IMG/VR virus record: IMGVR_UViG_3300037882_003354
Location: 186,001 to 250,000 of that record
Length of the DNA: 64,000 nt
Direction: 5' to 3' (one strand)
A program made the position numbers and the translations under genes. A model generated the notes under the pieces. That model saw nothing but the letters and a program-made list of their open reading frames with translations, was not told where the DNA came from and ran no database searches. Of the stretch, positions 1-15,981 are shown piece after piece; within the stretch, counting starts at the first letter, position 1, and each line of letters begins with the position of its first letter.

Positions 1-3000
1 CCGGCGGTGTTGTTGAGCAGTGCTTGGTAACCCAGAGCACTGTTCAGACTGCCAAGGGTGTTTGAGTATAGTGCAGAGTTGCCAATGGCCACGTTGTTGT
101 CGCCGGTGGTGTTACTGCGCAGTGAATCGGAACCCAGGGCAATATTACCGAATCCCGCAGTGTTTAAGGTCATGGCCAGACTTCCAATGGCTATATTTTT
201 ACAGCCAGCGGTGTTGCTACACAATGCACGTTTGCCTATGGCCGTGTTTTCATTGCCATGTGTATTTCTGAACAGTGCTCGCTCACCAATGGCTATATTG
301 TCGCAGCCGGTGACATTGCCGTAGAGTGCTCGGTATCCCTGGGCCACATTGTTGTTGCCGAGAGTGTTCAGTGCCAGAGACTGGTGCCCCTGGGCAATGT
401 TATTGACACCTGTGGTATTGCTGCATAATGTGCATGCACCGATGGCCACATTGCGGTTGCCCTGGGTATTGGCAGTTAAAGCCTGATGACCCAGTGCTGT
501 GTTAAACGAACCTTGGACGTTGGATTTTAACGAGTTGCATCCAATGGCTATGTTGTGTGATCCTGTTGTGTTGGCTGTTAGACCATAGGCTCCCAGTGCC
601 ACGTTGCCACCGCCGTCGGTGTTGCTGACCAATGCGCATCTGCCCAGCACCAGGTTGTCCTGGCCGGTCTGCGTCATGTTACCCGAGCAAAAGCCCACAC
701 TGATGTTGCCTAGGTTTGATGTGGTATATGCATACACCGCGCCCAGTACCACTGGTGTGGCTGCTGTGGATGTGCTACCAGCACCCCCTCCAGTAAATGG
801 GCTACCGTTGATGTATAATCCGGTGTCATCAACCTTGATACGCTCGGTGGTCCCTGCACCAATCAACACCGTGCCCACGCAATCAGCAGCGGCTGGCAGA
901 CTGCCAATCACAGTGTTGTTCACACCAGTGGTTATGGAACAGCCTGCCAGGGCGCCCACGGCTAGGTTGCCGCCGGTGGCATTGGCATTAAAGAGTGCGC
1001 GGCATCCCACGGCTGTGCTGTTGCAGCCAGTGGTGTTGCTTTTGAGTGCCCAGGTGCCCAGGGCTGTATTATTGTCACCAACAGTGTTGCTGCACATGGC
1101 TCGATAACCCTGTGCAACGTTGAAATTACCATCCCTATTTTTGTGTAGCGCATCGTAACCGATGGCCACGTTCAAGTTGCCAGTGGAGTTGCACCTCAGT
1201 GCATTTGCACCCAGGGCCACGTTGGCTTGGCCCGTGGTGTTGTCCAAGAGGGCATTCCAGCCCACAGCCACGTTAGATTGACCCGTGGTGTTGTTGTAGA
1301 GTGCACCGTAGCCCAGCGCAGTGTTCTGACTGCCAATGGTGTTTTCGCGCAGTGTACCGGCACCCACGGCTGTATTTTCCACTCCCACAGTGTTAGCGTA
1401 GAGTGCCCTGCTGCCCACAGCCACGTTGTCGTAGCCATTGGTGTTGCTGTAGAGTGCTGTGTAACCCTGGGCCGTGTTGCCCACGCCGGTGGTGTTGCCG
1501 TAGAGTGCTTGATAACCCTGGGCAGTATTGTTAATACCGCTGGTGTTGTTGGCCAGCGCGGCATTGCCCACGGCTATGTTGTTGTAGCCGGTGGTGTTGC
1601 CGTAGAGTGCATTCATACCTAGAGCAGTGTTGCCGGTGCCCATGGTGTTGTTGGTAAGTGCCGCCCGTCCAATGGCTGTATTGCCGTATCCTGCTGTGTT
1701 GCAGGTGAGTGCGCGATCGCCCACAGCAGTGTTCTGGCAACCGGTGGTGTTACGGTAGAGTGCACCGTAGCCCTGAGCTGTGTTATTACAGCCGGTGGTG
1801 TTGCAGAACAGTGCCAGTGTACCCTGAGCGGTGTTATTACAGCCGGTGGTATTTTTACACAGCGCCATGGCTCCCAGGGCCGTGTTGCATTGGCCAAAGG
1901 TATTACCATAGAGTGCTTGATGGCCCACGGCTACATTATAACAACCAGTGGTGTTGCATTTGAGTGCCAGTGATCCAATGGCCAGATTGCAACTGCCCAG
2001 GGTGTTATTGAATAATGCGCGACTGCCCAGGGCTATGTTGGAGCACCCTTGCGAGTTACTGTAGAGTGCTTCAGTGCCAATGGCAATGGTGCAACAACTG
2101 GTGTTACCGGCGGCGGAGTATTGCCCGGCTAGAGCAGCAAGACCAATGGCTATGTTGAGTGAGGCTTCACAACCATCTTGCATGGCACTTAGACCAATGG
2201 CTATGTTACAGTGGCCTGTACGATTTTTCTCGGCTGACCTAAAGCCCAGGCCTATGTTGTAGCAACCCTCGGTGTTGTAACCAAGCCCACCTATAGATAT
2301 ATTCCGGCTTCCCGCGGTGTTGCAGCCCAGTGCACCGTAGCCCAGGGCCACATTGTATTCGCCGTTGCTTTGATCGTACAACTGTCCGTAGAGTGCTTTG
2401 TTGCCAATGGCTACATTCTGTTTTCCTTGAGCAAAATGCAAGGCATTCAAGCCCACGGCCACGTTACAGCAGCCGGTCAGGTTAAAACTGAGCGCACCGC
2501 CGCCAATGGCCACATTGCCGTCTCCGGATGTATTGAATATATTAGTGAAACCGCCAATGCTCACGTTGTTGCAGGAGTTTATATTGAATCCGGAACCCCA
2601 GCCCAATGCCACACTGTCGCTAGCGGTGGGAAAGGGAAAGCCGGCGCCGGGTACAGTCCAGTTTTTAAAATAACCAGTGCAGCCGAACATGGTGCCCAGC
2701 AACTCGGGTTGTGCTTGTGGCACTAGACCGCCTGATCCAGTGAGTGGTTGGCCGTTGATGCACAGGCCATTGTTGTCCACCTTGATGCGTTCACAGATGC
2801 CAGCGCCTATGAGCACAGTGCATTCCAAACCAGGTGTACCGGGCAATGTACCAATGATGGTGTTGTTGACACCGGTAATCAGGTCGCAGCCTGCACAAGA
2901 TCCTATGGCAATATTACCACCAGTGGCAGTGGCATAGAAGAGTGCTGAGGCGCCGATGGCTATATTGCAGCAGCCGGAGATGTTGCTGTAAAGTGCACTT

Positions 3001-4136
3001 TTCCCCATGGCAGTATTGTTACTACCGCAAACGTTTTCGTAGAGTGCTTCATATCCCTGAGCCACATTGTTGTTACCGCCACGATTCATTTGAAGCGCGG
3101 ATATTCCCACAGCCACATTTGCGCATCCAGTGGTGTTACAGAGGAGCGCAAAATGTCCCTGAGCCACATTGAAATTGCCATAAGTATTGAAACGAAGTGA
3201 GCAGGCTCCCACGGCTGTATTACGGCATCCCGTGGTGTTGCCGCGGAGTGCACCTACACCCACGGCTGTGTTATAAAGGCCAACTGTATTACCAGCCAAT
3301 GCACTGGTGCCCACTGCTGTGTTGTTGCCGCCAGTGGTGTTACGGTAGAGTGCGTTGTACCCTTGCGCCGTGTTGCAGCCACCAAAAGTATTACTAGCGA
3401 GCGAGTTATTACCCACCGCCGTGTTCCAGTTACCAGAAGTGTTGCTGGTCAGCGAATTATGTCCAATTGCCACATTACAACAACCAGAAATATTATTACG
3501 AAGTGCCTGACCAACGGCTGTATTACGATTACCAACAGTGTTGTTACGAAGTGCAGCATAGCCGTGCGCCGTGTTGAAACAGCCAGTGGTGTTATCGCGA
3601 AGCGCCCAAGCACCCACAGCAGTGTTGCAGCCGCCGTTTACACTATGATTTGCCAGAGCGCACACGCCCACTGCCACGGTCAAGGCACCAGTCATGCTAT
3701 TGCCTGCACAATATCCCAGAGCGGTGATACTACCGGTACTGGTGGTGTATGCGTACACTGTGCCCAGAGTGGTGGGGGTGGCCGGGTTGGTGGTACCTGA
3801 CCCACCTGAGCCCACCAGCACTCCATTGGAATAGATGTTGCCGCCCACGTAAAGATCCAGCCCAACACCCAGACCTCCTCCAACAACCAGTGCACCAGTG
3901 GTGGTGCCCGTGGAGTTGGTGGTGTTTGACAGTGTCAGGGTGCTGGTGGTGGCCGTGGTCAGCACCGAGTTTCCGCCCACGGTTATGTTGCCAGTGGCAG
4001 TGACTGTGGTGACCACCTGAGGGCCGCTGTTGGTTATCAACCATCTTTGGGTTGCCTCATTCCAGGTGTAGATAACACCTGAAGTACTGGTGGAAACTTG
4101 ACCGTTGGTTGGATTTGCTGGATATAATGTTGCCAT
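1..4136 (-). CDS. Cys-rich repeat tail fibre / adhesin-like beta-helical protein, partial (>1378 aa, runs off left edge)
   Basis: ATG at 4136 reads MATLYPANPTNGQVSTSTSGVIYTWNEATQRWL, then many ~14-aa repeats of type NTAVGxxALxxNTTGC. The ORF track lists no ORF in this frame, consistent with no stop codon inside the window. It starts 15 nt downstream of the 4152..6143 gene. Confidence 0.85.
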   Translation of the reverse strand, partial: MATLYPANPTNGQVSTSTSGVIYTWNEATQRWLITNSGPQVVTTVTATGNITVGGNSVLTTATTSTLTLSNTTNSTGTTTGALVVGGGLGVGLDLYVGGNIYSNGVLVGSGGSGTTNPATPTTLGTVYAYTTSTGSITALGYCAGNSMTGALTVAVGVCALANHSVNGGCNTAVGAWALRDNTTGCFNTAHGYAALRNNTVGNRNTAVGQALRNNISGCCNVAIGHNSLTSNTSGNWNTAVGNNSLASNTFGGCNTAQGYNALYRNTTGGNNTAVGTSALAGNTVGLYNTAVGVGALRGNTTGCRNTAVGACSLRFNTYGNFNVAQGHFALLCNTTGCANVAVGISALQMNRGGNNNVAQGYEALYENVCGSNNTAMGKSALYSNISGCCNIAIGASALFYATATGGNIAIGSCAGCDLITGVNNTIIGTLPGTPGLECTVLIGAGICERIKVDNNGLCINGQPLTGSGGLVPQAQPELLGTMFGCTGYFKNWTVPGAGFPFPTASDSVALGWGSGFNINSCNNVSIGGFTNIFNTSGDGNVAIGGGALSFNLTGCCNVAVGLNALHFAQGKQNVAIGNKALYGQLYDQSNGEYNVALGYGALGCNTAGSRNISIGGLGYNTEGCYNIGLGFRSAEKNRTGHCNIAIGLSAMQDGCEASLNIAIGLAALAGQYSAAGNTSCCTIAIGTEALYSNSQGCSNIALGSRALFNNTLGSCNLAIGSLALKCNTTGCYNVAVGHQALYGNTFGQCNTALGAMALCKNTTGCNNTAQGTLALFCNTTGCNNTAQGYGALYRNTTGCQNTAVGDRALTCNTAGYGNTAIGRAALTNNTMGTGNTALGMNALYGNTTGYNNIAVGNAALANNTSGINNTAQGYQALYGNTTGVGNTAQGYTALYSNTNGYDNVAVGSRALYANTVGVENTAVGAGTLRENTIGSQNTALGYGALYNNTTGQSNVAVGWNALLDNTTGQANVALGANALRCNSTGNLNVAIGYDALHKNRDGNFNVAQGYRAMCSNTVGDNNTALGTWALKSNTTGCNSTAVGCRALFNANATGGNLAVGALAGCSITTGVNNTVIGSLPAAADCVGTVLIGAGTTERIKVDDTGLYINGSPFTGGGAGSTSTAATPVVLGAVYAYTTSNLGNISVGFCSGNMTQTGQDNLVLGRCALVSNTDGGGNVALGAYGLTANTTGSHNIAIGCNSLKSNVQGSFNTALGHQALTANTQGNRNVAIGACTLCSNTTGVNNIAQGHQSLALNTLGNNNVAQGYRALYGNVTGCDNIAIGERALFRNTHGNENTAIGKRALCSNTAGCKNIAIGSLAMTLNTAGFGNIALGSDSLRSNTTGDNNVAIGNSALYSNTLGSLNSALGYQALLNNTA

Positions 4137-4151
4137 GCGATTGATCTCTTA

Positions 4152-6143
4152 TTATATATTACTTATCTGTATCCAGAATGTGCTGGTGCCGTCCTTGATG
4201 TACTGTAGATATGCACCAAACACCGTGTCAACCCAAAAGTCCCCCACCCTGGGATCGGCTGGTGGGAAACCTGTATCGGTGGCCGTGAACTTGGGGGTGT
4301 ACAGCAGGTAGTTTTCCTGTGGATTTCCATCAGCACTGTACACTGATCCCGCAACACCCAGGCCACCAGCCACCGTCACGGCACCAGTGGTGGTGGATGT
4401 TGACGCAGCGGTGCTGATGACTGCCAGTTTGGCAGTGCTCAATTTGTCGTCAGCGGTGTTGAAATTTAGATTGAGGGAGGCGCTGATGGGCGAACTGTCG
4501 CCCACAGTGTTGTCAGCCAAGCCCAGATAGTAGGTGGTGTTGGTGACTGTGCCATTTATTTGAATCTCAGTGGTGGCCAGGCCAGCACCGTAAAAATTGC
4601 CGCGTACTGTGAGATCTTTCTCCACAATGAGGTTTTCGCTGATGGCCACACCACCCAGCACACTCACTGCGGCTATCAATTCATTCAGGTATACTTCGCC
4701 ACCACCGGTGTACTCCACATATCCAGAACTATCAAACAGACTGGTCAAATAACCGTCTGTATACAATACCAGTTGGTCAGGTGCCGGGACCTTGACAAAA
4801 AACTTAGGGCCGTTCAACTCTGTCAGACCCTCCACCCCAATGAAGGACACACTCTGTCCAGGTACTATTCCGTGCGGTTCCCGGGTGGTCACAATGGTGG
4901 CTGTGTTTCCCGGCACGCTCCGCTGTACGTCGTCTATAAGGGTCTTAAATGTCTGATCGGTTGCAGTGGTACCAAATCCCACACCCAGGTCGGTGTTCAT
5001 CTGTGTGTAACCGTAACCGTTATAATACAACATGGAACCGATGTTGATCTGGTTGTCCAGCCCATCCACCAGGTTGTCGCCACCTATGCTGATGTTGCTG
5101 TTACCACGTGTCATGTTGCTGGCCACGCTGTGACCCATGAAGAAATTATAACTGCCAGTGGTCAGGTTGGTGGCAATGTTATAACCCAGCAGGAAGTTTT
5201 CCTGACCGTCGATCAGGCTAATACCTGCATTGACACCAATGGCCACGTTGCTGTTCCATACTGTGGTCACATTAACCTTACCGCCACTCTGGTATGGTGG
5301 CAATGCCGAACCATCCAGCGGACTTAGGAAAATAATGTCGTTGTACAGTGCCAGTGTGGATGAATCCACCACAATCACATAAAATTTCTGTTCATTTAAC
5401 TCATCTGGTCCCACTATTTCTGTGACTACAATTCGAGTGCCAGTGGTAAGAGCATGGCCTGGTGAGGTGACCAACACCGGGCTACTTGTGGTAATGTTGG
5501 TGATAGTGGATACAAACAGATACTGGTATGTGCCGATGTTTTTAAGTGCACTGTCACCAATGGCTATGGTGTTTTCCACCCCAGTGCCTGAACTGATGGC
5601 ATATCTGCCAATGGCAATGTTCTTGATTGCGCTGCCCAGGCCATCCAGGGCACTGTGCCCAATCACTATGTTTTCCTGACCGTTGGCAAAGTCGTTGGTC
5701 TGTGTGGTTGCCACACCCTGGATCACAATGTTATTGACTTGTCCCTGTTCATAATTTTTCAATCCTTGGCCGATCAACAGGCCATTCACATGGATGTCTT
5801 CAGCAGTCCAAAGAGCACCACCTATGCCCACACCGCCCTCCACAGTCAATGCACCTGTGTCGGTGCTCACTGACATGACAGTGCCTCGCACCTGCACGTT
5901 GCTGGTACCAGTGCCAATGAACACAATGGGAGTATTGGGTAGGTTGTTATAAACAGTGCCCGAGTTCATTTCCAAGTTGCCCAAGCTGGAACGATAGGTG
6001 GTCACCAGTTTGTCGCTGGTGACCACAGTATAGCCCGTGCTGGTGTCAGGTGTGGCCGGCAACTGAGGTTGCGCGCCGGCCAGGTCAATATATTGACCGC
6101 TGCCACCAGTTCGTAGTGTTCTTCCGCTTAGTAGTGATGCCAT
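4152..6143 (-). CDS. Tail fibre / virion structural protein with NxAIG repeats and two small beta domains
   Basis: 663-aa ORF with STxTGALTVxGGVGIGG fibre motifs, NIAIG repeats, and two copies of (I/V)VT..(P/G)H.....G..(I/V)....G..ELN..KF(Y/F)V....L.LY. Confidence 0.7.
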   Translation of the reverse strand: MASLLSGRTLRTGGSGQYIDLAGAQPQLPATPDTSTGYTVVTSDKLVTTYRSSLGNLEMNSGTVYNNLPNTPIVFIGTGTSNVQVRGTVMSVSTDTGALTVEGGVGIGGALWTAEDIHVNGLLIGQGLKNYEQGQVNNIVIQGVATTQTNDFANGQENIVIGHSALDGLGSAIKNIAIGRYAISSGTGVENTIAIGDSALKNIGTYQYLFVSTITNITTSSPVLVTSPGHALTTGTRIVVTEIVGPDELNEQKFYVIVVDSSTLALYNDIIFLSPLDGSALPPYQSGGKVNVTTVWNSNVAIGVNAGISLIDGQENFLLGYNIATNLTTGSYNFFMGHSVASNMTRGNSNISIGGDNLVDGLDNQINIGSMLYYNGYGYTQMNTDLGVGFGTTATDQTFKTLIDDVQRSVPGNTATIVTTREPHGIVPGQSVSFIGVEGLTELNGPKFFVKVPAPDQLVLYTDGYLTSLFDSSGYVEYTGGGEVYLNELIAAVSVLGGVAISENLIVEKDLTVRGNFYGAGLATTEIQINGTVTNTTYYLGLADNTVGDSSPISASLNLNFNTADDKLSTAKLAVISTAASTSTTTGAVTVAGGLGVAGSVYSADGNPQENYLLYTPKFTATDTGFPPADPRVGDFWVDTVFGAYLQYIKDGTSTFWIQISNI

Positions 6144-6577: not shown

Positions 6578-9500
6578 TTATCCGCCGGCTTCAATGGCTA
6601 ATATGAACGGAGTCATGTTAGCAAATAACGATTTAGTAAATGTTCGTCCAGATAGTACGCCAGTGGCTTGACTGATCACCAAGCCCGGTCCAATTCTAAA
6701 GTCACCATTCTGGTCAGTGCTGGTAAAGAACACCTTGCCAGTGTCCAACTGAACTGTTTCTTTTCCCTGCACAGGGTCAGCCAGTCCCACTTGTGGCAGA
6801 GCTCCGTAATCAGTACCGGCGCCCACATATTCAAACACATAACCAGATGCGCTGATATACGAACGTTGATAGAAATTCACATTGCAGCCATCTGGGAACA
6901 GATCAGTTCTTCTGACGGCTTCACCAAGATCCACCAGGTGGTGAGTGCGGTCTCTAGACCAGTAGCTCAGACCTGTGAACACGCTGTTGTAATTACCACC
7001 AGACTGCAAATCGTAAATCAATCTCCGCAAGATGAGTTTGAGGTCTCTGCGACACTTGACGTCATCATAGTCGGAAAAATTCAACCCTGGTCCAGCCAAT
7101 CCAGTGCTGCTGGATCCAATATAAGCACTGACTTCTGCTGCCAAGAAATCTAAATTTCGTTCTATCAGGGTTATGGCTGCCCCAGCGCCAGCAGGAATTG
7201 TGCCTGTCTTCAATCTCAATTTGCTGGTATCTGGAACTATTCCATTCGCCTGGGTAAAATCTGGTGCATCGATTATATCGTTGATGATTTTAAATCTTAG
7301 ATTGATAAACGGTGTAGCAGCCGCACCACCGCTGACCAGTAGATCTATTTGTTGCGTTGCAGTGGTCTGATAATAGTCCACAGAAGAGCTAGTATTATTA
7401 CTGATCACAAGGTTGGTCAAGGTGTTTAAATATACCAATGCAGCCAGATGATTTTCCACTTGATCGGGTGGTTGTACTAACGAAGCAGCAAGTGGTACCA
7501 ACGGGCTCGGGTCGCTGTATTCCAAACCATCCGCAGAAAGAATGTTAATTCCAGCCGGCTTGGGGTTTTCAGGATCAACTTTCACACTAATGGGATTCTC
7601 AGCTATGTTACTGCTCAACACCGTATAATAGGCGTTGCCGCAAAATAACAGAGTAAAATACCTGTCGTTTATTTGTCCGGGTTTGTTATCAGGATCCTGC
7701 CCGCCATTGGTCAATGCGTTGTTTAATGTCACGCTCCGATAGCCAATGTCAGTGACCACTGTACCCGAGGCAGCATACATCACTCCATTGGTGCCGGTCT
7801 GGGAGTTGTCTTGGTCCCTGATATAAACAGCATTGCCAACTGCAATACCTTCAGTATCAATTCCAGTGATGGTTATGGTGCCAGTATTCAATATACCAAT
7901 ATCAGGCAGGGCATTCAAGAAACCTGGGAAATTTTGTTCGTTACGGTAGGGACCCAGGTCACCGTTGAAATCACGAAATGCGTCCGGTGGCTCCACTTCC
8001 ATGACCAAGGATATGTGAGGGCGGTCAGCCGTGTCTGGCAGGAACACCTGAACCCTGGCATTGTTGGGCCAGAAACCGTTGGGATAATATTGATTGTCCC
8101 CTTCGTTCTCAATCTCGTCGATCTTGACCCCCGCCAGGTCGCGTTTGAACCTTGGTGGACTGTTGGGATATGCTCGGAATGCAGGGTTATAAATTGTGCC
8201 CGAGAATTTACGCTTGCCATAACCCTTGCTCAACAGGCAAATATCGCCAAAGTTGGCATTACTGTTGACGATGGACGCAATACCGCCGCTGTCAGTTTGC
8301 ACACCCACTGAGGAGAAGATGGTGAACACGGACACCAACTGGGCATAGCCGTCATTGGTGATATGAATTCCGCGGCCGCCTTGTGTCAACTGAGTATATG
8401 CGTCATACACGAATGACTGAATGGGCGAACGACTGCTGACCACTTTGCCATCCACCAGGCTGCCGCCCATGCCACCTATGGGGTCTACTTTTCGTTGATT
8501 CCAAGTGGTGGTCGTGTTGGTGTATGCCAAACTTAATTCTTCAACTTCAAAGTCACGCTTGGGGAACACCAAGACATCTCCAAAATACAGTGTGGCATTG
8601 TTGCCAAATCCTATGGTGGGGGTGTCCAGTCCAATCAAGAATGTTCCAGTAGTGGCCGAAGTCACACTGGTCACCCGAGTGGCTATTTTTGTATCCAGTC
8701 CGTTGATGCCAGTTAGTGAAAATAGTCCACCACCAGCATACACTGGCGGTGCGTATAATGGCCCACGCTCAATGATGGTGGTGATGATGCTAAAATTACG
8801 CATTATTGCCTGCTGCGGCATGTAATCACCACCGTACTGGAAGAAGGTGTTGATCACCTGCTTGGCCACAGTGCCTGTTTGTGGTGTCACTGGTTGGTTG
8901 GCAATGATCTGCAGTGCAATGTCCCTGGCATGATTGAGAGCCAGGGTGGTTGTGGTTTCCTGACCAGTGACATAATTGTACCCGGCGTTCCAATAGGAGA
9001 CTCCAGCCTCTATGGACTTCTGATTGCCACCCAGCAAGATGTCCTGACTCACTGCGTCAATAATTAGTCCGGTGTCTCTGTAACATTTTTCTTGGTTGTA
9101 GTTAAAAGAATTGGGATTCTCAGTATTATTGATATACTGTATGACTTCTGCTGCAATGAATGCCTTGTTGGCATTCAATATTTTAAAGGCGTTCATTGCC
9201 ATGCCTAGGTCGTCGGCAGCAACGAGCGAGATGGGGCGTAACGCTTGCGCTGCACCAGGGCCATCGTCGATTATGGTGTTAATTATATTAATTGCTGCAG
9301 CCAAGGCAGCTGCCGTGGCTGCATTGCTACTAACGAATGAAGAGGTGTTGGCTTGAAGTACAGTGGTTTGTAAAGGAACTATGACCCTATTTTGTATAAT
9401 GTCCCCAATAATGGTGGACATGTGTTCAAATGCGGCCACCGTTTGTGGTTGTTCGCCCTGGATAACTGAAGTAGAGGTGCTCAGATTATAATATGACAAT

Positions 9501-12500
9501 CCTGATTGTACACTCTGTCTGTTTCCACCATGTTTAAGGTCGAAACATATGCTGTCCACCATGTATCCAATGTCGCGTGTGCAAGTGTTCTCGTTGTAGG
9601 TTCCTTGAAATCCAGGATTGGTAGCGTTGATAAACGCAATAATTTCTTCTTGTAAATAACCCTTGTTGGCCTGCAACAAGTCGTAGGCATTGTAAACGCT
9701 GGCCAAGTTGCTGGGCAAGCCGTTGGGCACAATCCGGTCGCTCCATCCCAGATTATTGCCGCTGACTATGGTGATGATGTTGTCAAAGTTTGCATTGATG
9801 ATGGCAATTTCACGGTCGGTGGCAGGTTCTAGGTTGGTGATTTGTGTGGCTGTGGAATATCTAGAAACACCAACCAACACATCAGTGGCCGTGGTGATGT
9901 TTTGAATGATTTTGACACTCAACTCTTTTAGATATCCGATTGCTGAAACAGTGGGGTTCAGCTGGGTTAAAATTTCTCCAGTGTACCCGTCCTGATTCCA
10001 ATATTGCAAGCCCGCAAATGTTGACTGACTGTTTTCCACAGTGGGATAGAGTACGTCCAGAGCAATACTGTCAATGATCAATCCAGTGTCTCTCTTGCAC
10101 TTGATTTCGTTATATGGAAATTCCTTAAATGTATTATTGATCCAATTGATGGTGTCTTCTTGTATAAACGCGCGATTGGCCTGCATTAAAATCTCAGCAC
10201 TGACATATGCAGCATCTGGGCCAGGGCCAGTATACACCTCAGGAACAGAATCAGCGCCCTGCAGAATGGCATCAGTGACTATGTCAAATAGTTTGCTGAT
10301 GCTGCTGACACTGACTTCACCGCCAATCAACGCAGTGTTGATCACCTGCTGATTGGTGGCCGTGGTAATTTCTCCCTGCACAAAGAGATCCGTGCACGGG
10401 GTATTGGTCACCACCTTTTGACACAGCCCGCTCAGGTAATCAATGGCCGATGAGCATTGATTTTCCTGCCCGGCAATGTAACTGACTGCACCGTCATAGT
10501 ATGCCAATCCACTTTCCACAGACTTTTGATTGCCGCCAAACGCCACATCATACGCAATATTTTCAACTAAGATGCCTGAATCTCTATACGATTTTTCTCT
10601 GGAGAATTCAAAACTGTTAAACTGACTAGCGATGTAGGCTACGACCTCTGCCTGTATAAATGCACGGTTGGCCACCAGCAGATTGTATGCATTTTCCACC
10701 TGAACCGATTCATTCTTGGTCAAATTAATGGGCACCTTGGATGGGGCAAATTCCGAGCCCAGTCTAGTAATGTTGACGATGAGATCCATCTTATCCTGCA
10801 AACTGTTCACTTCATAAGTAGTTGCACTGGTTAAGTTTACCACCTGAGACGTGCCTGTTTGATACAGAGTGGCTGGTGGTTTGCATGTGACCACACTTTG
10901 AACAAGTGTCTTGATGTAGTTGTACGCGGCGCTGGTCCGTGGAATTTGTCCTGGTATGGTGGATGCGCCAGTATATCCGTAATAATAAAAACCGATTTTG
11001 GTAGATTGCTTGTTGCTGCTAATGGTGGTGGCACCGTGTAGCAAATCAAAGGCCACGCTATCAATAATATATCCTAGATCAATTCTGCATCTCGCCTCAT
11101 CGTACACGAATCCAGAAAGTAATCCAACTGTGATTTGTCGGTTGATCTCTTCAATCGTCTCTTCAATTACACCAGCCTTGCCGTTCACCAGGGCGGTATA
11201 AGCAGCCACCACACCAGCATCAGTGGTGGCTGTGGTATTCGATACAATGTTGCCTGGGGTAGCAGCAATTTGACGATTGTCATCACTGTTTATGATACCA
11301 CGTACCCTGTCGAACAAGGTCCCAACGTTTGCGCCATATGCACCAGCCAGAGTCTGGCAAAGACCATTGGCAAAGAAAACAGCTTCAAGAGTGGCGGTAG
11401 ACTGATCGCCAATGACTGATTGGGTATTGTTTTCTTGATTCCAGTTGCTCAGGCCAGCAAACACACTCTCACTAGTACTGTTGTACAATAAATCCAGGGC
11501 AATACTGTCTACGATCGATCCAACATCTGCACCGGTATACGCAGGCGCACTACCATTAAATGTGTTGTCGAGAAACTTGACCACTTGCTCTTGCATGAAT
11601 GGTTTGTTGGCCAACATCAAGGTGCGGGCATTAAAAAATCCTGGATTTTGTTGTCCCGGATTTATATACATGCCCTGTTCAATGGTGCCGGTGCTGACTT
11701 CCACCAGGAGAGTGGTGGTGTTGGACACCCAGGTGCCGGTGCCCACAGCCAGTGGCACTTGAACAGTCTGATTGGGCACAAACAAGGTGCCATCCTTCAA
11801 CCAAGGACCAGACAGATTGGTACAGTTTTGAATGTAGGGTGAGTGGAATATGTCAATACGGGCATCGCCTTCCAGTGGGGGATAGGCAGTGGCATATGCT
11901 CCACGGTTGAATCTGGGATCATAAACACCTTCCAGTAATCCACTACGTCCATTGAGGAATTGCATGAATGCCAGATAGCAGCCGGAGTTCATGTGGAACA
12001 AGTCCTGCGTCTTGTTAATGGGTTCAATACTGGTGGTTCTAATATCGGAACCCATGACGCTGGTATAAGGTTTCAATTGCAGCGGATTGTCTTCCAGATA
12101 GGTGCCGGCGCTGACTTGAATTTGTGTGCCCGGCTGATAGTATGGGCTGTTGATTGCACCCCCCACGGTACGGCAGGCGCGGCTGGCATCCAGTGCCCGC
12201 CCATCGTTGGTGTCGTTGCCGTCCATGGTCACATAAAGCACATTGGTCACCACAGGTGCTGTGCCTATGGGTTTCTGACCCAGCACGCGAATGTCTCCCA
12301 CTATCTCAGTCAGTCTGCTTTCAGGTTTGATCTGTATGGGGCCGCTGGTGCTCTCTATGATCTTGGTGTACAGCTGATCCACATACTCGGCACCGCCTAT
12401 GTGCACATCTCCGCCTATGCCCACGCCGCCAGTGACTGTGAACGCTCCAGTGGTGGTGCTGGTACTCGACGCAGTGGATGTCACTGCCATTTGTTCCACG

Positions 12501-13150
12501 ACCAATTTTCCAGTGAATGGGTTGTATGTCAACCCACCCTCAACGTCAGTACCGTTGGTGTTGTCAGTGAACAAATATCCAATTCCGTTGGGATTTCGAC
12601 TGAATGTTGGATAAAATGTAGCATCCACGTTGGTGGCCGTGATCAACAACTGCAAGGAGGTGGTGGCTTGTGCCACTCGTCCGTAGATGAATCCACCAAC
12701 GTTTAAATCTTTTTGTATGCCTACACCGCCGGCAATAAAAACAGCACCCTGCTGTCGTTGCAGATCGGCTGCCTCCCGTCCCAAAAGATCCTGACCATAT
12801 ACATCCTCAGCCAGAGGGATTCCGAAAGGATTGTCCACATTGTCATCGTTGGCTTTGATGATCATGGTACCGGTGTTGCCAACCACGGCAATGGTGCCAG
12901 TTATGGCAGTGTCACCACCCACATTGAGGTTCTTGGTGATGCCCACACCACCGTTGACCACCAGTGCACCCGTGGCACTTGATACTGACTCTGATGTATC
13001 CTGAACAATGGTGGGGCCGGCAATAGTCAGGTTACCAGTGACGAATGTATCTGTGGAATCTATGTAGATTTTCCCGGTGGGCGACGATACCGCCGTGTCC
13101 CCCTTGGGGGTTACAACTCTGGTTCCGGATACTCTGATCACTGTGGCCAT
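6578..13150 (-). CDS. Large virion structural protein (2190 aa): fibre motifs, beta-helix entry motif and seven helical repeats
   Basis: VLYVTMDGNDTNDG...ACRTVGGA motif and repeated KCxRDxGxIIDSIAxDLxxGGNxxSxxxGLxY(W/Y). SD AAAGGA and a TAAATA motif lie upstream. Confidence 0.75.
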   Translation of the reverse strand: MATVIRVSGTRVVTPKGDTAVSSPTGKIYIDSTDTFVTGNLTIAGPTIVQDTSESVSSATGALVVNGGVGITKNLNVGGDTAITGTIAVVGNTGTMIIKANDDNVDNPFGIPLAEDVYGQDLLGREAADLQRQQGAVFIAGGVGIQKDLNVGGFIYGRVAQATTSLQLLITATNVDATFYPTFSRNPNGIGYLFTDNTNGTDVEGGLTYNPFTGKLVVEQMAVTSTASSTSTTTGAFTVTGGVGIGGDVHIGGAEYVDQLYTKIIESTSGPIQIKPESRLTEIVGDIRVLGQKPIGTAPVVTNVLYVTMDGNDTNDGRALDASRACRTVGGAINSPYYQPGTQIQVSAGTYLEDNPLQLKPYTSVMGSDIRTTSIEPINKTQDLFHMNSGCYLAFMQFLNGRSGLLEGVYDPRFNRGAYATAYPPLEGDARIDIFHSPYIQNCTNLSGPWLKDGTLFVPNQTVQVPLAVGTGTWVSNTTTLLVEVSTGTIEQGMYINPGQQNPGFFNARTLMLANKPFMQEQVVKFLDNTFNGSAPAYTGADVGSIVDSIALDLLYNSTSESVFAGLSNWNQENNTQSVIGDQSTATLEAVFFANGLCQTLAGAYGANVGTLFDRVRGIINSDDNRQIAATPGNIVSNTTATTDAGVVAAYTALVNGKAGVIEETIEEINRQITVGLLSGFVYDEARCRIDLGYIIDSVAFDLLHGATTISSNKQSTKIGFYYYGYTGASTIPGQIPRTSAAYNYIKTLVQSVVTCKPPATLYQTGTSQVVNLTSATTYEVNSLQDKMDLIVNITRLGSEFAPSKVPINLTKNESVQVENAYNLLVANRAFIQAEVVAYIASQFNSFEFSREKSYRDSGILVENIAYDVAFGGNQKSVESGLAYYDGAVSYIAGQENQCSSAIDYLSGLCQKVVTNTPCTDLFVQGEITTATNQQVINTALIGGEVSVSSISKLFDIVTDAILQGADSVPEVYTGPGPDAAYVSAEILMQANRAFIQEDTINWINNTFKEFPYNEIKCKRDTGLIIDSIALDVLYPTVENSQSTFAGLQYWNQDGYTGEILTQLNPTVSAIGYLKELSVKIIQNITTATDVLVGVSRYSTATQITNLEPATDREIAIINANFDNIITIVSGNNLGWSDRIVPNGLPSNLASVYNAYDLLQANKGYLQEEIIAFINATNPGFQGTYNENTCTRDIGYMVDSICFDLKHGGNRQSVQSGLSYYNLSTSTSVIQGEQPQTVAAFEHMSTIIGDIIQNRVIVPLQTTVLQANTSSFVSSNAATAAALAAAINIINTIIDDGPGAAQALRPISLVAADDLGMAMNAFKILNANKAFIAAEVIQYINNTENPNSFNYNQEKCYRDTGLIIDAVSQDILLGGNQKSIEAGVSYWNAGYNYVTGQETTTTLALNHARDIALQIIANQPVTPQTGTVAKQVINTFFQYGGDYMPQQAIMRNFSIITTIIERGPLYAPPVYAGGGLFSLTGINGLDTKIATRVTSVTSATTGTFLIGLDTPTIGFGNNATLYFGDVLVFPKRDFEVEELSLAYTNTTTTWNQRKVDPIGGMGGSLVDGKVVSSRSPIQSFVYDAYTQLTQGGRGIHITNDGYAQLVSVFTIFSSVGVQTDSGGIASIVNSNANFGDICLLSKGYGKRKFSGTIYNPAFRAYPNSPPRFKRDLAGVKIDEIENEGDNQYYPNGFWPNNARVQVFLPDTADRPHISLVMEVEPPDAFRDFNGDLGPYRNEQNFPGFLNALPDIGILNTGTITITGIDTEGIAVGNAVYIRDQDNSQTGTNGVMYAASGTVVTDIGYRSVTLNNALTNGGQDPDNKPGQINDRYFTLLFCGNAYYTVLSSNIAENPISVKVDPENPKPAGINILSADGLEYSDPSPLVPLAASLVQPPDQVENHLAALVYLNTLTNLVISNNTSSSVDYYQTTATQQIDLLVSGGAAATPFINLRFKIINDIIDAPDFTQANGIVPDTSKLRLKTGTIPAGAGAAITLIERNLDFLAAEVSAYIGSSSTGLAGPGLNFSDYDDVKCRRDLKLILRRLIYDLQSGGNYNSVFTGLSYWSRDRTHHLVDLGEAVRRTDLFPDGCNVNFYQRSYISASGYVFEYVGAGTDYGALPQVGLADPVQGKETVQLDTGKVFFTSTDQNGDFRIGPGLVISQATGVLSGRTFTKSLFANMTPFILAIEAGG

Positions 13151-14802: not shown

Positions 14803-15981
14803 TTACTTGAAGCTGACGCCGGCGGAGGTGATGGACACCTTGCCCAGGTAGTCAGCAGCATTGCCCAGTGAACTGGCGGCATTGCTCAACTCAACATAGC
14901 CATAACGTGTCAGGAAACCAACCACTGGCTCGAATGTGGATGGGTCAAGAACAACACCAGAGCTCATTAGAGGGATGTAAGGGCAATAGAAAGCGGCGGC
15001 ATCGGCCTCGCTTGCACCCTTGTATCCAACCAGCACCTGGTTGTCATCAGAAGTGTCGCTCAGATAAGCGTCAACATAGATGCGCATGCTTCCATTCAGT
15101 GTTCCAACAAACTTGGTGTTTGTAGGAGCTTCGAATGTGCCCTCTGTGGTGCGAGCAAACGCACTGGTGGTAGCACTCTGCAGAATGGTCAGAGCTTGGT
15201 TGGAAACCACAGCCCAGTTACCAGCGCCACGACGTGTGCGCTGTGCGATCAGATTGGCTGTACGGTTGATCTGAATGGCCAGAGCAGCATGCTCGTCACC
15301 AACAAATGTGGCTGTACCAGAAACCAGACGTTGGTCATATGTTTCTTCAACACTGGCCAATCCGCGCAGGCTGGTCAAGATTTCTTGGTCGATTTCAGCC
15401 GTGATTTCTTGTGCCAGAGCAGCCATGATTTCTGCTTCGATGTCAATGCCTTGTTGGGCTTGTGCATCTTGAGCAGCTTCAAAGGTCCAACGAGCTGACA
15501 GCTTGCGGCTCTTGGCCTCAACTGGGCTCTTCAAGATCTGGATGCTCATGCGCTTGCCAGGTGTACCTTCCAGAGCCGATGTTGTATTGGCCTTGGGTGA
15601 AGTAACACTGTCAGCATTACCAGAGTAGCCAGCAGCAATCTTGAATGGGCTCAATGCCTCTTCACCAGCTGTGACCAGGTTGTCGCCATCTGCATAGCGA
15701 ACGCGAAGTGTGTGAATCTGTCCAACTGGACCAGTCATTGGCTGAACGCCGATGATCTCGTTGGCAATAACTGTAGGCATAACACGGCGGATAACTGGTA
15801 GAATCACACGGTTAAGTGTTGCTACGTTACCTGCGCTGGTTGCACCGGCGGTTGCGCTTTCAGCCAAACTGCGACGTGTGTTCTCTAAGCATACGCTCAT
15901 TGAAGCACGACGGTTACCAGATAGGCCTTCAAGCAGAGCTTCTTTGGTCTCTGACCATCTTTCATTTAGTAATTGTGACAT
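14803..15981 (-). CDS. gp23: Major capsid protein, T4 gp23 family
   Basis: Motifs VIRRVMPTVIANEIIGVQPMTGPVGQIHTLR, AKSRKLSARWTFEAAQD, EITAEIDQEI, FYCPYIPL and DPSTFEPVVGFLTRYG. Confidence 0.97.
   Translation of the reverse strand: MSQLLNERWSETKEALLEGLSGNRRASMSVCLENTRRSLAESATAGATSAGNVATLNRVILPVIRRVMPTVIANEIIGVQPMTGPVGQIHTLRVRYADGDNLVTAGEEALSPFKIAAGYSGNADSVTSPKANTTSALEGTPGKRMSIQILKSPVEAKSRKLSARWTFEAAQDAQAQQGIDIEAEIMAALAQEITAEIDQEILTSLRGLASVEETYDQRLVSGTATFVGDEHAALAIQINRTANLIAQRTRRGAGNWAVVSNQALTILQSATTSAFARTTEGTFEAPTNTKFVGTLNGSMRIYVDAYLSDTSDDNQVLVGYKGASEADAAAFYCPYIPLMSSGVVLDPSTFEPVVGFLTRYGYVELSNAASSLGNAADYLGKVSITSAGVSFK

What the first reader, a model, noticed from the sequence alone, without database searches (positions are those of the whole stretch)
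6960..11560. Phycobiliprotein-like C-x-R-D repeats with a ~166-aa period in a virion protein
Seen: seven helical repeats in the 2190-aa protein. Examples: RCRIDLGYIIDSVAFDLLHG (Cys codon 11087-11089), KSYRDSGILVENIAYDVAFGG, KCKRDTGLIIDSIALDVLY (10097-10099), TCTRDIGYMVDSICFDLKHGG (9581-9583), KCYRDTGLIIDAVSQDILLGG (9083-9085) and KCRRDLKLILRRLIYDLQSGG (7052-7054). Five consecutive copies sit at residues 688, 854, 1018, 1190 and 1356 (spacings 166, 164, 172, 166). Known: the bilin-attachment helix of phycocyanin alpha reads approximately [21 protein letters not shown], and phycobiliprotein subunits are about 160-175 aa with a globin-like fold. Inference: these may be tandem phycobiliprotein-fold domains. 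Five of seven keep the Cys, raising the possibility of a pigment-binding (photoprotective or light-sensing) virion appendage. Similar repeats may be common in aquatic T4-like phages, and the resemblance was judged by eye only.
Basis: partly seen in the sequence, partly recalled or inferred. Interest (0 to 1): 0.7.

Follow-up and report, generated by a model that had tools for sequence, protein, structure and literature searches.

The report
Phycobiliprotein-like domains in a phage fibre
A giant tail-fibre-like protein of a 322-kb freshwater phage has a shaft made of tandem domains that are remote relatives of the light-harvesting phycobiliproteins of cyanobacteria and keep their pigment-attachment residues, so phage particles may carry bilin pigments, although nothing here shows that a pigment is bound.

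Summary
The ORF at window 6578-13150 (-), 2190 aa, holds six tandem ~166-aa units plus one split unit. Cys is kept in five units, and the full C-x-R-D motif in four.

The fold inference is supported. A single unit gives a confident AlphaFold2 model (pLDDT 92). Phycobiliproteins are its best matches among 48,161 PDB chains (Z 13-15, then sensor globins at Z 11). A profile-profile comparison with CpcA gives 93% probability (P 3e-7) and aligns Cys, Arg and Asp with Cys84, Arg86 and Asp87.

In 1,230 units from 121 giant metagenomic homologues, Cys is kept in 98%, Arg in 99% and Asp in 100%. Among 50,697 phage isolates the domain occurs only in cyanophages, in baseplate or fibre proteins (S-PM2, P-HM1, P-HM2, Syn9 and others).

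The window's genome carries a hemO-pcyX bilin cassette 160 kb away. In 25 cyanomyoviruses the lyase-like gene cpeT never occurs without the domain, but this is not significant once phylogeny is considered.

Pigment binding is untested. Points against it: the motif is eroded in this protein, a 92%-identical relative has Phe/Tyr in place of three of the Cys residues, and near-complete relatives lack the cassette. I found no publication describing this.

The parts
6578..13150 (-). ORF of 2190 aa (P0001): giant virion fibre-like protein
   Evidence: ORF list and translation. PHROG tail-fibre families phrog_5342, 17885 and 4527, E 1e-55 to 5e-68. It lies two small ORFs downstream of the major head protein, in a portal / head / tail-spike module.
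11672..13150 (-). N-terminal non-repeat region (residues 1-493), Gly-rich; likely the attachment or beta-helical part
   Evidence: No repeat-HMM match. Only weak Pfam hits, for example DUF1565 at E 0.12. This part and the C-terminus are what match tail fibres of many cyanophage isolates.
11228..11671 (-). Unit 0 (residues 494-641): phycobiliprotein-like domain, motif lost (no Cys, no Arg), C-terminus truncated
   Evidence: Repeat HMM positions 1-139, 152 bits; alignment A1.
10721..11239 (-). Unit 1 (residues 638-810): Cys688 present, motif reads C-R-I-D
10226..10735 (-). Unit 2 (residues 806-975): S-Y-R-D, with Ser854 in place of Cys
9716..10237 (-). Unit 3 (residues 972-1145): K-C1018-K-R-D, full motif
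9224..9730 (-). Unit 4 (residues 1141-1309): T-C1190-T-R-D, full motif
   Evidence: part of the two-unit AlphaFold2 model.
8729..9235 (-). Unit 5 (residues 1306-1474): K-C1356-Y-R-D, full motif; the unit that was modelled
   Evidence: AlphaFold2 pLDDT 91.8, pTM 0.88. Best PDB matches are all phycobiliproteins. Pfam PF00502 at E 0.004-0.005, below the cut-off. The Cys codon shows only a synonymous variant in lake metagenomes.
7481..8728 (-). Non-repeat insert (residues 1475-1890), function unknown
   Evidence: No repeat-HMM match. phrog_29288 (unknown function) matches residues 1554-1645.
7259..7480 (-). C-terminal-half unit (residues 1891-1964; helices G-H equivalent)
   Evidence: Repeat HMM positions 87-159.
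6896..7207 (-). N-terminal-half unit (residues 1982-2085) with K-C2033-R-R-D, full motif
   Evidence: Repeat HMM positions 5-99, 110 bits. This Cys is conserved in all close relatives.
6590..6889 (-). Conserved C-terminal fibre domain (residues 2088-2187)
   Evidence: Matches the C-terminal ends of PHROG tail-fibre and baseplate families 17885, 3442, 9851 and 13163, and of fibre proteins of cyanophage isolates.

Best explanation
Shown: the ORF encodes a giant virion fibre-type protein. Its shaft is an array of ~166-aa helical domains that are remote homologues of phycobiliproteins. They have the globin-like core (helices A-H) but no X-Y dimerisation hairpin. The units align best with phycocyanin alpha. 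Across the family they keep the three residues that define the Cys84 chromophore site of phycobiliproteins: the thioether Cys, the propionate-binding Arg, and the Asp that binds the pyrrole nitrogens.

Inferred, and my preferred mechanism at about 40%: units with an intact motif bind a linear tetrapyrrole while the fibre is made inside the infected cell. The bilin would sit along the Cys helix, held by Asp and Arg and fixed through the Cys. It would come from the host or from the phage's own heme oxygenase-PcyX cassette. Attachment would be autocatalytic (as in ApcE), by host S-type lyases, or, in marine cyanomyoviruses, by the phage's CpeT-like protein. Released particles would then carry pigmented fibres or baseplates.

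The most attractive use is as a light-responsive element in adsorption, but that step is speculation.

In this particular protein the site is eroding. Only four of seven units are intact, so at most a few sites would be occupied.

The confidence given (0.4) is for the bilin-binding mechanism. The architecture and homology part I hold at about 0.9.
For: Fold:
- The single-unit AlphaFold2 model has pLDDT 91.8 and pTM 0.88.
- A Foldseek-independent search of 48,161 PDB representatives puts eight phycobiliproteins on top (Z 14.9-11.6). ApcE's bilin domain scores Z 13.7 at rmsd 2.1 over 117 residues. Sensor globins follow at Z 11 and haemoglobins at Z 6-7.
- The Foldseek top 50 are all phycobiliproteins, probability 1.0, TM 0.55-0.68.
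- The two-unit model scores Z 16.3 against phycobiliproteins, and the next unrelated fold scores 6.4.

Sequence:
- A profile of 95 units searched against 177,635 PDB sequences returns phycocyanin alpha as the top 15 hits, best E 0.002, with Cys/Arg/Asp aligned to Cys84/Arg86/Asp87.
- hhalign against 75 CpcA sequences gives 93.3% probability, P 2.7e-7, over 97 columns. The reversed control gives 0.5% and 20 block shuffles give at most 6%.
- PF00502 is the only Pfam family hit. It matches 10 of 95 single units at E <= 0.01, and the 17-unit homologues P0002 and P0004 pass its sequence cut-off.

Site conservation:
- In 1,230 units that average ~30% identity, Cys is kept in 98%, Arg in 99% and Asp in 100%, with one conserved Cys per unit.
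- In 37 copies from 13 marine cyanomyovirus isolates, Cys is kept in 32 and the Asp in about 33.

Context:
- Among 50,697 isolate genomes the domain occurs in 211 records, all cyanophages.
- The window's genome carries PcyX (PDB 5OWG, E 2e-46) next to a heme oxygenase.
- cpeT is present in 15 of 18 domain-positive cyanomyoviruses and in 0 of 7 domain-negative ones.
- cpeT lies 1-3 kb upstream, on the same strand, of a giant domain-bearing fibre gene in S-PM2, S-RSM4 and Syn1.
- S-PM2, P-HM1 and P-HM2, which need light to adsorb, have the domain. P-SSM2 and P-SSP7, which adsorb in the dark, do not.
Against: - No pigment has been observed. Nothing here tests binding, and I could not inspect the model's pocket.
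- In this protein three of seven motifs are degenerate. A 92%-identical relative (P0027) has Phe, Tyr and Phe in place of C1018, C1190 and C1356, so these Cys residues are dispensable in this lineage.
- Two of the four near-complete jumbo genomes that have the fibre protein lack both heme oxygenase and reductase.
- Reductase genes show no association with the domain in the 18 isolates checked (17 cyanomyoviruses plus the podovirus P-SSP7). P-SSM2 and S-SSM7 have a reductase but no domain.
- The cpeT association rests on two or three phylogenetically independent contrasts, so a sign test cannot reach significance.
- T-type lyases canonically serve Cys155, not Cys84 (PMC10452541).
- About a third of the marine copies read C-x-D-D, so the Arg is not needed there.
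- Tandem units made of the C-terminal half alone exist in S-PM2, which suggests a plain building-block role.
- The host is unknown and the genome has no psbA.
- I know of no report of coloured cyanophage particles.
Confidence: 0.4

Rival explanations
1. Pigment-free scaffold. A phycobiliprotein-type globin domain was captured (or shares ancestry) and is now only a rigid, stackable helical spacer that sets fibre length. Cys, Arg and Asp are kept because they form an internal hydrogen-bond or salt-bridge network with the other family-specific invariant residues (Asp at +14, Tyr78, Gln129).
For: - Unit number varies from 7 to 18 between homologues, as expected for a length-setting module.
- Units made of half a domain occur in tandem in S-PM2 and as a split unit in this protein.
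- A 92%-identical relative replaces Cys with Phe or Tyr, which suits a buried packing position.
- The family has its own invariant residues that phycobiliproteins lack.
- Near-complete relatives lack bilin genes.
- The marine C-x-D-D subclass dispenses with the Arg.
Against: - Exactly the three chromophore-site residues are the most conserved positions, while the rest of the domain has drifted to ~15% identity with phycobiliproteins.
- A single, 98%-conserved unpaired Cys per domain is unusual for an extracellular structural protein.
- Among isolates the module is restricted to phages whose hosts are full of bilins and bilin lyases.
- cpeT is never found without the domain.
Confidence: 0.4
2. 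The conserved Cys/Asp site binds something other than a bilin, for example a metal ion, a host surface ligand or a redox partner. The phycobiliprotein fold is then only the chassis of a receptor-binding or sensing module.
For: - C-x-D-D and C-x-R-D variants, plus an invariant Asp three turns along the same helix, would give an acidic, thiol-containing site.
- The nearest non-phycobiliprotein structural neighbours are sensor globins and stressosome RsbR domains, which are ligand-sensing modules.
Against: - No positive evidence points to any particular ligand.
- All sequence-level similarity is to phycobiliproteins, not to sensor globins.
- Arg at 99% in the jumbo-phage family does not fit a metal site.
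Confidence: 0.12
3. The resemblance to phycobiliproteins is convergent or a modelling artefact. The units would be an unrelated helical repeat that shares a short K-C-x-R-D-x-G-Y motif by chance.
For: - Single-sequence and Foldseek E-values are weak, 0.002 to 0.07.
- The window's protein does not reach Pfam's cut-off.
- hhalign against CpcB alone gives only 6.7%.
Against: - The hhalign alignment spans 97 columns (helices A to G), not just the motif. Block shuffles that keep the motif reach at most 6%.
- The unbiased structural search ranks eight phycobiliproteins first out of 48,161 chains, covering residues 8-157 of 169.
- In the two-unit search Z falls from 10.7 to 6.4 after the phycobiliproteins.
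- PF00502 is the only one of 24,736 Pfam models that the units hit recurrently.
Confidence: 0.05

Closest known systems
Phycobiliproteins (Pfam PF00502), especially phycocyanin alpha (CpcA)
   Same: Globin-like helical core A-H of about 165 aa. The helix-E motif K-C-x-R-D-[IV]-G-Y...G-G aligns with Cys84, Arg86 and Asp87. Supporting scores: hhalign 93%, structural Z 13-16, and PF00502 as the only Pfam hit.
   Different: No X-Y N-terminal hairpin. The units are fused head to tail, 7-18 per chain, inside a 2,000-3,800-aa virion protein rather than being free 160-175-aa subunits in (alpha-beta)3 discs. About 15% identity. The family has its own invariant residues (Asp at +14, Tyr78, Gln129). No evidence of a chromophore.
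Bilin-binding PB domain of the phycobilisome core-membrane linker ApcE
   Same: A phycobiliprotein-type domain embedded in a very large multidomain protein. It is one of the tightest structural matches (Z 13.7, rmsd 2.1 over 117 residues). From my own knowledge, ApcE attaches its bilin without a lyase, which shows that such a domain can do so.
   Different: ApcE has one such domain, interrupted by a loop, and its attachment Cys is at a different position. It is a cellular antenna component, not a virion protein.
BBAGs, the bilin biosynthesis-associated globins (phycobiliprotein paralogues of heterotrophic bacteria; Rockwell et al. 2023, PMC10151467), and the 'bacterial fluorescent protein' 8U0F
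   Same: Phycobiliprotein-like globins outside phycobilisomes, found in genomes that carry PcyA-type reductases. 8U0F is among the best structural matches (Z 16.0). The Shemin-pathway phage paper (PMC11480375) names BBAGs as a possible partner of phage hemO-pcyA/X cassettes.
   Different: BBAGs are small free-standing cellular proteins encoded beside the reductase. Here the domains are tandem parts of a structural protein 160 kb from the cassette. I made no direct sequence comparison with BBAGs.
Giant baseplate and tail-fibre proteins of T4-like cyanophages (S-PM2 p091 and the 3,779-aa 'short tail fiber', P-HM1/P-HM2 gp7, Syn9, Syn1, S-RSM4, S-SCSM1 'long tail fiber, virion protein')
   Same: They contain 2-11 copies of the same domain with K-C-x-R-D or N-C-x-D-D, and they share the N- and C-terminal fibre domains.
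   Different: They have fewer, more scattered and more diverged copies mixed with other modules. Their phages are 170-250-kb Kyanoviridae carrying psbA-type genes, whereas this phage is a 322-kb jumbo phage with a PA5oct-like portal. None of the records seen annotates the domain as phycobiliprotein-like.
Globin-coupled sensors and stressosome RsbR N-domains
   Same: Same broad globin-like fold; they are the next-best structural neighbours (Z 10-11.5).
   Different: No sequence signal, no Cys-x-Arg-Asp motif, and they bind heme or are ligand-free.

Membership tests
Phycobiliprotein family (PF00502) | Globin-like helical fold of phycobiliprotein type (helices A, B, E, F', F, G, H) | tested here: met
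   AlphaFold2 model with pLDDT 91.8. In VIA-align against 48,161 chains the top 8 are phycobiliproteins, Z 11.6-14.9, covering model residues 8-157. The Foldseek top 50 are all phycobiliproteins.
Phycobiliprotein family (PF00502) | Sequence match above Pfam's curated cut-off (22.2 bits) | tested here: not met
   Not met for the window's protein: 15.4 bits for the whole protein and 17.3-17.4 for unit 5. The 17-unit homologues P0002 and P0004 pass at sequence level (35.4 and 38.1 bits) by summing weak domain hits.
Phycobiliprotein family (PF00502) | Detectable homology by profile-profile comparison | tested here: met
   hhalign against CpcA gives 93.3% probability, P 2.7e-7, over 97 columns. Controls reach at most 6%. 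Against CpcB the result is only 6.7%.
Phycobiliprotein family (PF00502) | Chromophore-site triad Cys84 / Arg86 / Asp87 on helix E | tested here: met
   The triad is aligned column for column. It is present in four of seven units here. In the family Cys is kept in 98%, Arg in 99% and Asp in 100%.
Phycobiliprotein family (PF00502) | N-terminal X-Y helix hairpin that mediates alpha-beta pairing | tested here: not met
   Structural and profile alignments begin at phycobiliprotein residues ~20-48. A unit has six helices and no extra N-terminal hairpin.
Phycobiliprotein family (PF00502) | Covalently bound bilin | not testable with these tools
   Needs expression or virion biochemistry. The complex predictor offers no bilin ligand.
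Phage tail-fibre / baseplate-associated fibre proteins | Similarity to known fibre families and location in the virion gene module | tested here: met
   PHROG tail-fibre families at E down to 5e-68. Neighbouring genes are the major head protein, portal, tape-measure-like protein and tail spikes. The C-terminal domain is shared with cyanophage fibres.
Phage tail-fibre / baseplate-associated fibre proteins | Presence in the virion and trimeric fibre assembly | not tested
   No proteomics exists for this uncultured phage. The S-SCSM1 homologue is annotated as a virion protein. I ran no oligomer prediction.
Phage hemO-pcyX pigment cassette (Ledermann et al.; PMC11480375) | PcyX-type reductase adjacent to a heme oxygenase in the same genome | tested here: met
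   G000:C1:32238-32801 matches PDB 5OWG PcyX at E 1.7e-46, against PcyA at 2e-9. A heme oxygenase lies at 33028-33411. A functional link to the fibre protein is not shown.

The most novel reading that the evidence does not exclude
Cyanophage (and related jumbo-phage) particles carry covalently bound bilins on phycobiliprotein-derived domains of their fibres and baseplates. These domains would act as the phage's own photoreceptor, gating adsorption by light. This would explain the light-dependent, photosynthesis-independent adsorption of S-PM2, P-HM1 and P-HM2. It would also give the long-unexplained phage genes cpeT, pebS, pcyA, pcyX and ho1 a target in the virion rather than in the host antenna.
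Probability: 0.15. Interest if true: 0.95.

Novelty: new variant of a known kind. Interest (0 to 1): 0.78.

Why it matters
Three questions in cyanophage biology have stayed open:
- Why do phages carry bilin-synthesis genes, even phages of Prochlorococcus, which lacks phycobilisomes? Sullivan et al. 2010 (PMC3037559) call this "a mystery". PMC11480375 asks the same about hemO-pcyX cassettes in phages thought to infect non-cyanobacteria.
- What is the substrate of the phage CpeT-like lyase? PMC3037559 calls its role "unresolved".
- How can adsorption of some cyanomyoviruses depend on light but not on host photosynthesis? PMC6628666 suggests light-sensitive host receptors or phage tail fibres.

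A phycobiliprotein-type domain with an intact chromophore triad, sitting in exactly those fibre and baseplate proteins, gives one concrete molecular candidate for all three. It can be tested with cultured phages (S-PM2, P-HM2, Syn9) and standard E. coli bilin co-expression.

Even if the domains are pigment-free, the finding documents a light-harvesting protein fold reused as a structural module of virions. It also gives a name to a domain present in hundreds of unannotated giant phage proteins.

Tried and rejected
- An orthologous alignment of the last unit (A4) worked.
- **No small stand-alone homologues.** Searching the 5.8-billion protein set with the unit profile for small proteins or phycobiliproteins gave only fragments of giant proteins. 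No intermediate between phycobiliproteins and the phage domain was found.
- **AFDB clusters uninformative.** They gave only generic globin-like hits at E > 0.2 and no closer cellular relative.
- **Reductase and heme oxygenase association rejected.** Only 3 of 25 long IMG/VR contigs carry them, and only G000 and G004 among the four near-complete genomes. There is no association in the 18 isolates checked.
- **pcyX-bearing contigs inconclusive.** Five of 14 fragments carry domain proteins. These contigs are 20-58% complete and probably kin, so this proves nothing.
- **cpeT association not established.** The raw Fisher test gives 2.5e-4. On a portal tree only two or three independent pairs exist, none discordant in direction, and the sign test gives p 0.5-1. 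I treat it as a lead, not a result.
- **Host inference failed.** There is no psbA in this genome or in 15 related contigs. No CpeT or CpeS was found.
- **Cys-to-Phe/Tyr variant not seen in metagenomes.** Read laying on four lake metagenomes did not show the P0027 variant. The only variant seen at the Cys1356 codon is synonymous.
- **Paper not available.** Gasper et al. 2017 on phage CpeT is not held in the library.
- **Not attempted.** I did not use complex prediction, because no bilin ligand is offered and I make no protein-protein binding claim. Model coordinates are not readable, so pocket geometry and Cys exposure were not examined.

Full report
**The observation.** The window holds one 2190-aa ORF on the minus strand, 6578-13150.
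- The units are real repeats. They are 26-37% identical over ~170 aa, and BLASTP of unit 5 against unit 2 gives E 5e-35.
- A repeat HMM defines six consecutive units (residues 494-1474), a ~415-aa non-repeat insert, a C-terminal-half unit (1891-1964), an N-terminal-half unit carrying the motif (1982-2085), and a 100-aa conserved C-terminal domain.
- Five of the seven motif-bearing units keep the Cys. Only four keep the full C-x-R-D. Unit 1 reads C-R-I-D, unit 2 reads S-Y-R-D, and unit 0 has lost the motif.

**What the protein is.**
- PHROG matches are all tail-fibre, short-tail-fibre, baseplate-wedge or virion-structural families, with E down to 5e-68.
- The gene lies in a structural module: portal at 19106-20842, major head protein at 14803-15981, two small ORFs, this gene, then two tail-spike-like proteins.
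- The genome is a 322,512-bp virus record with terminal repeats, judged complete.
- Its portal is closest (~50% identity) to Pseudomonas PA5oct-like, Sinorhizobium Phosso and Erwinia jumbo phages. It has no psbA.
- The sequence recurs in lake and freshwater metagenomes from about a dozen studies, and in lake metatranscriptomes.
- It is therefore an uncultured freshwater jumbo phage of unknown host, not a classical T4-like cyanophage.

**The fold.**
- A single unit (residues 1306-1474), modelled with an alignment of 95 diverse units, gives a confident compact domain of six helices (pLDDT 91.8, pTM 0.88). A two-unit model gives pLDDT 83.
- In a search that does not rely on Foldseek, across 48,161 PDB representatives, the eight best matches are all phycobiliproteins: phycoerythrin beta Z 14.9, allophycocyanin Z 14.2, and the ApcE bilin domain Z 13.7 at rmsd 2.1 A over 117 residues. 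Globin-coupled sensors follow at Z ~11, photocobilin globin domains at 10.8, and haemoglobins at 6-7.
- The Foldseek top 50 are all phycobiliproteins (probability 1.0, TM 0.55-0.68).
- For the two-unit model the phycobiliproteins score up to Z 16.3, and the first unrelated fold scores 6.4.
- The alignments cover phycobiliprotein residues ~33-177. This is the globin core without the X-Y hairpin.

**Sequence-level homology.**
- Pfam's Phycobilisome family PF00502 is the only family the units hit recurrently. It matches 10 of 95 units at E <= 0.01, against two stray single hits to other families.
- The window's own protein stays below the curated cut-off: 15.4-17.4 bits against 22.2.
- The 17-unit homologues P0002 and P0004 pass the cut-off at 35 and 38 bits.
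- A profile of 95 units searched against all PDB sequences returns phycocyanin alpha subunits as the top 15 hits (best E 0.002). It aligns helices A/B through E and places Cys, Arg and Asp on Cys84, Arg86 and Asp87.
- I fetched cpcA and cpcB genes from 80 cyanobacterial genomes and ran hhalign. The unit profile against CpcA gives 93.3% probability, P 2.7e-7, over 97 columns (unit 13-116 against CpcA 38-147).
- Controls: the reversed alignment gives 0.5% and 20 block-shuffled controls give at most 6%. CpcB alone gives 6.7%.
- Together with the fold, this supports remote homology rather than a chance motif.

**The family.**
- The unit region finds 981 proteins, mostly 2,000-3,800 aa, from metagenomes, on contigs up to 373 kb. 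Many carry precomputed PF00502 hits.
- These proteins have up to 17-18 C-x-R-D motifs spaced ~162-166 residues apart.
- In 1,230 full units from 121 proteins, at about 30-35% mean identity, the best-conserved positions include Cys (98%), Arg (99%) and Asp (100%) of the motif. Also conserved are an Asp 14 residues after the Cys (100%), a Tyr (100%) and a Gln (89%).
- There is one conserved Cys per unit.
- The window's protein belongs to a short subfamily of ~2,160-2,200 aa with seven units, in which the motif is eroding unit by unit.
- The 92%-identical P0027 has Phe, Tyr and Phe in place of C1018, C1190 and C1356. P0089 and P0094 lose different units.
- In four lake metagenomes the only variant seen at the Cys1356 codon is synonymous.

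**Distribution among cultured phages.**
- tblastn of two units against 50,697 isolate genomes hits 211 records. All are Synechococcus or Prochlorococcus phages, in genes annotated gp7 baseplate wedge, short or long tail fibre, tail protein or virion structural protein. BFVD fold matches agree.
- S-PM2 p091 (3,338 aa) and P-HM2 gp7 contain copies with K-C-x-R-D.
- In 37 motif-bearing copies from 13 marine cyanomyoviruses, Cys is kept in 32. Eighteen read C-x-R-D, 12 read C-x-D-D and 2 read C-x-T-D. Cys and Asp are therefore the constant pair, while the Arg is specific to a subclass.
- No record seen here calls the domain phycobiliprotein-like. Seven full-text searches and targeted reading found no description of it.

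**Links to bilin metabolism.**
- The window's genome encodes a reductase far closer to phage PcyX (PDB 5OWG, E 1.7e-46) than to PcyA (2e-9). It sits next to a short heme oxygenase, then ClpS and an Hsp20, about 160 kb from the fibre gene. There is no CpeS and no CpeT.
- The purpose of such cassettes is an acknowledged open question. A BBAG-type globin has been floated as a partner (PMC11480375).
- The cassette is not tied to the fibre protein. Of the four near-complete jumbo genomes that have the protein, only two carry it. Reductases show no association with the domain in the 18 isolates checked.
- The lyase-like gene cpeT behaves differently. Across 25 cyanomyovirus genomes the counts are: domain and cpeT both present 15, domain only 3, cpeT only 0, neither 7. 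P-SSM7's cpeT is taken from the table in PMC3037559.
- The raw Fisher p is 2.5e-4. A portal tree, however, places all seven negatives in one of two major clades and leaves only two or three independent contrasts. None is discordant in direction, which is too few for significance.
- In S-PM2, S-RSM4 and Syn1, cpeT lies 1-3 kb upstream of a giant domain-bearing fibre gene on the same strand. These three phages are a single clade on the portal tree.

**A possible phenotype.**
- Published work shows that P-HM1 and P-HM2 do not adsorb in the dark, and that S-PM2's light-dependent adsorption is independent of host photosynthesis. P-SSM2 and the podovirus P-SSP7 do adsorb in the dark. The authors suggest light-sensitive receptors or tail fibres (PMC6628666; PMC2984593).
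- The first three phages have the domain and the last two do not.
- With five phages this is an anecdote, but it points to the experiment.

**Interpretation.**
- Established: the fibre shaft is an array of phycobiliprotein-homologous globin domains that retain the chromophore-site residues, and the module is a widespread, previously unnamed component of cyanophage fibres and baseplates.
- Not established: that any bilin is bound. I put bilin binding in intact units at about 40%. A pigment-free scaffold is also about 40%. Another ligand is about 12%, and chance or artefact about 5%.
- The erosion of the motif in this protein, the Phe/Tyr replacements in its nearest relative, the half-units, and the relatives without bilin genes are the main arguments for the scaffold view.
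- The main arguments for a ligand site are the near-invariance of exactly the chromophore triad across more than 1,200 diverged units, the single conserved free Cys in an extracellular protein, and the restriction to cyanophages among isolates.

**Novelty and score.**
- The fold and family are known. Their use as tandem modules of virion proteins, with the chromophore site preserved, is to my knowledge undescribed. I class it as a new variant of a known kind.
- It makes three long-standing puzzles directly testable with cultured phages: the role of phage bilin genes, the target of CpeT, and light-gated adsorption. Interest 0.78.

Noticed in passing
G000:C1:30738-34301 (locus L002; outside the window, about 160 kb upstream): A cassette of a PcyX-type bilin reductase, a short (175-aa) heme oxygenase, a ClpS adaptor and an Hsp20 chaperone on one strand. 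A collagen-like (Gly-X-Y) protein lies on the other strand.
   Followed up: partly
window 7259-7480 and 6896-7207: The last unit is split and in reversed order. A C-terminal-half unit (helices G-H) comes first, then an N-terminal-half unit with the motif. They might pack together as a circularly permuted domain.
   Followed up: no
S-PM2 p091, locus L278, residues ~1147-1475: Tandem units consisting only of the C-terminal half of the domain (HMM positions 43-155), with no Cys helix. These also appear in Syn1, S-RSM4 and others, so the half-domain is a repeat unit in its own right.
   Followed up: partly
P0027 (92% identical metagenomic homologue), residues equivalent to C1018, C1190 and C1356: All three Cys residues are replaced by aromatic residues (Phe, Tyr, Phe), each by a single-base change of a TGY codon, while Arg-Asp is kept. 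Only the last unit keeps its Cys. The variant was not seen in four lake metagenomes.
   Followed up: partly
window 3-4136 and 4152-6143 (minus strand): Two further large structural proteins lie just downstream (more than 1378 aa and 663 aa). Both match tail-spike and virion-structural PHROGs, and the first has 9-13 repeated matches.
   Followed up: no
NC_006820.1 (S-PM2) 165928-177267, locus L283: The RefSeq table lists 16 tRNA features inside the 3,779-aa 'short tail fiber' CDS, sharing its locus tag S-PM2t009. This looks like an annotation or coordinate inconsistency in that record.
   Followed up: no
window 19106-20842 (portal) and the whole genome G000: The portal is ~50% identical to those of Pseudomonas PA5oct-like, Sinorhizobium Phosso and Erwinia jumbo phages. 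The fibre protein's relatives among isolates, in contrast, are exclusively cyanophages. There is no psbA in this genome or in 15 related contigs, so the host is unresolved.
   Followed up: partly
window 9384-9476: A cluster of 16 substitutions within ~90 bases, in the loop/helix G-H region of unit 4, is shared by contigs from two independent lake studies (X1, X3). The flanks are nearly identical, so this may be a local hypervariable or recombined patch.
   Followed up: no
S-PM2 163952-165888; similar arrangement in Syn1 and S-RSM4: A 2OG-Fe(II) oxygenase gene sits between cpeT and the giant domain-bearing fibre gene in S-PM2. Whether it belongs with them is unknown.
   Followed up: no
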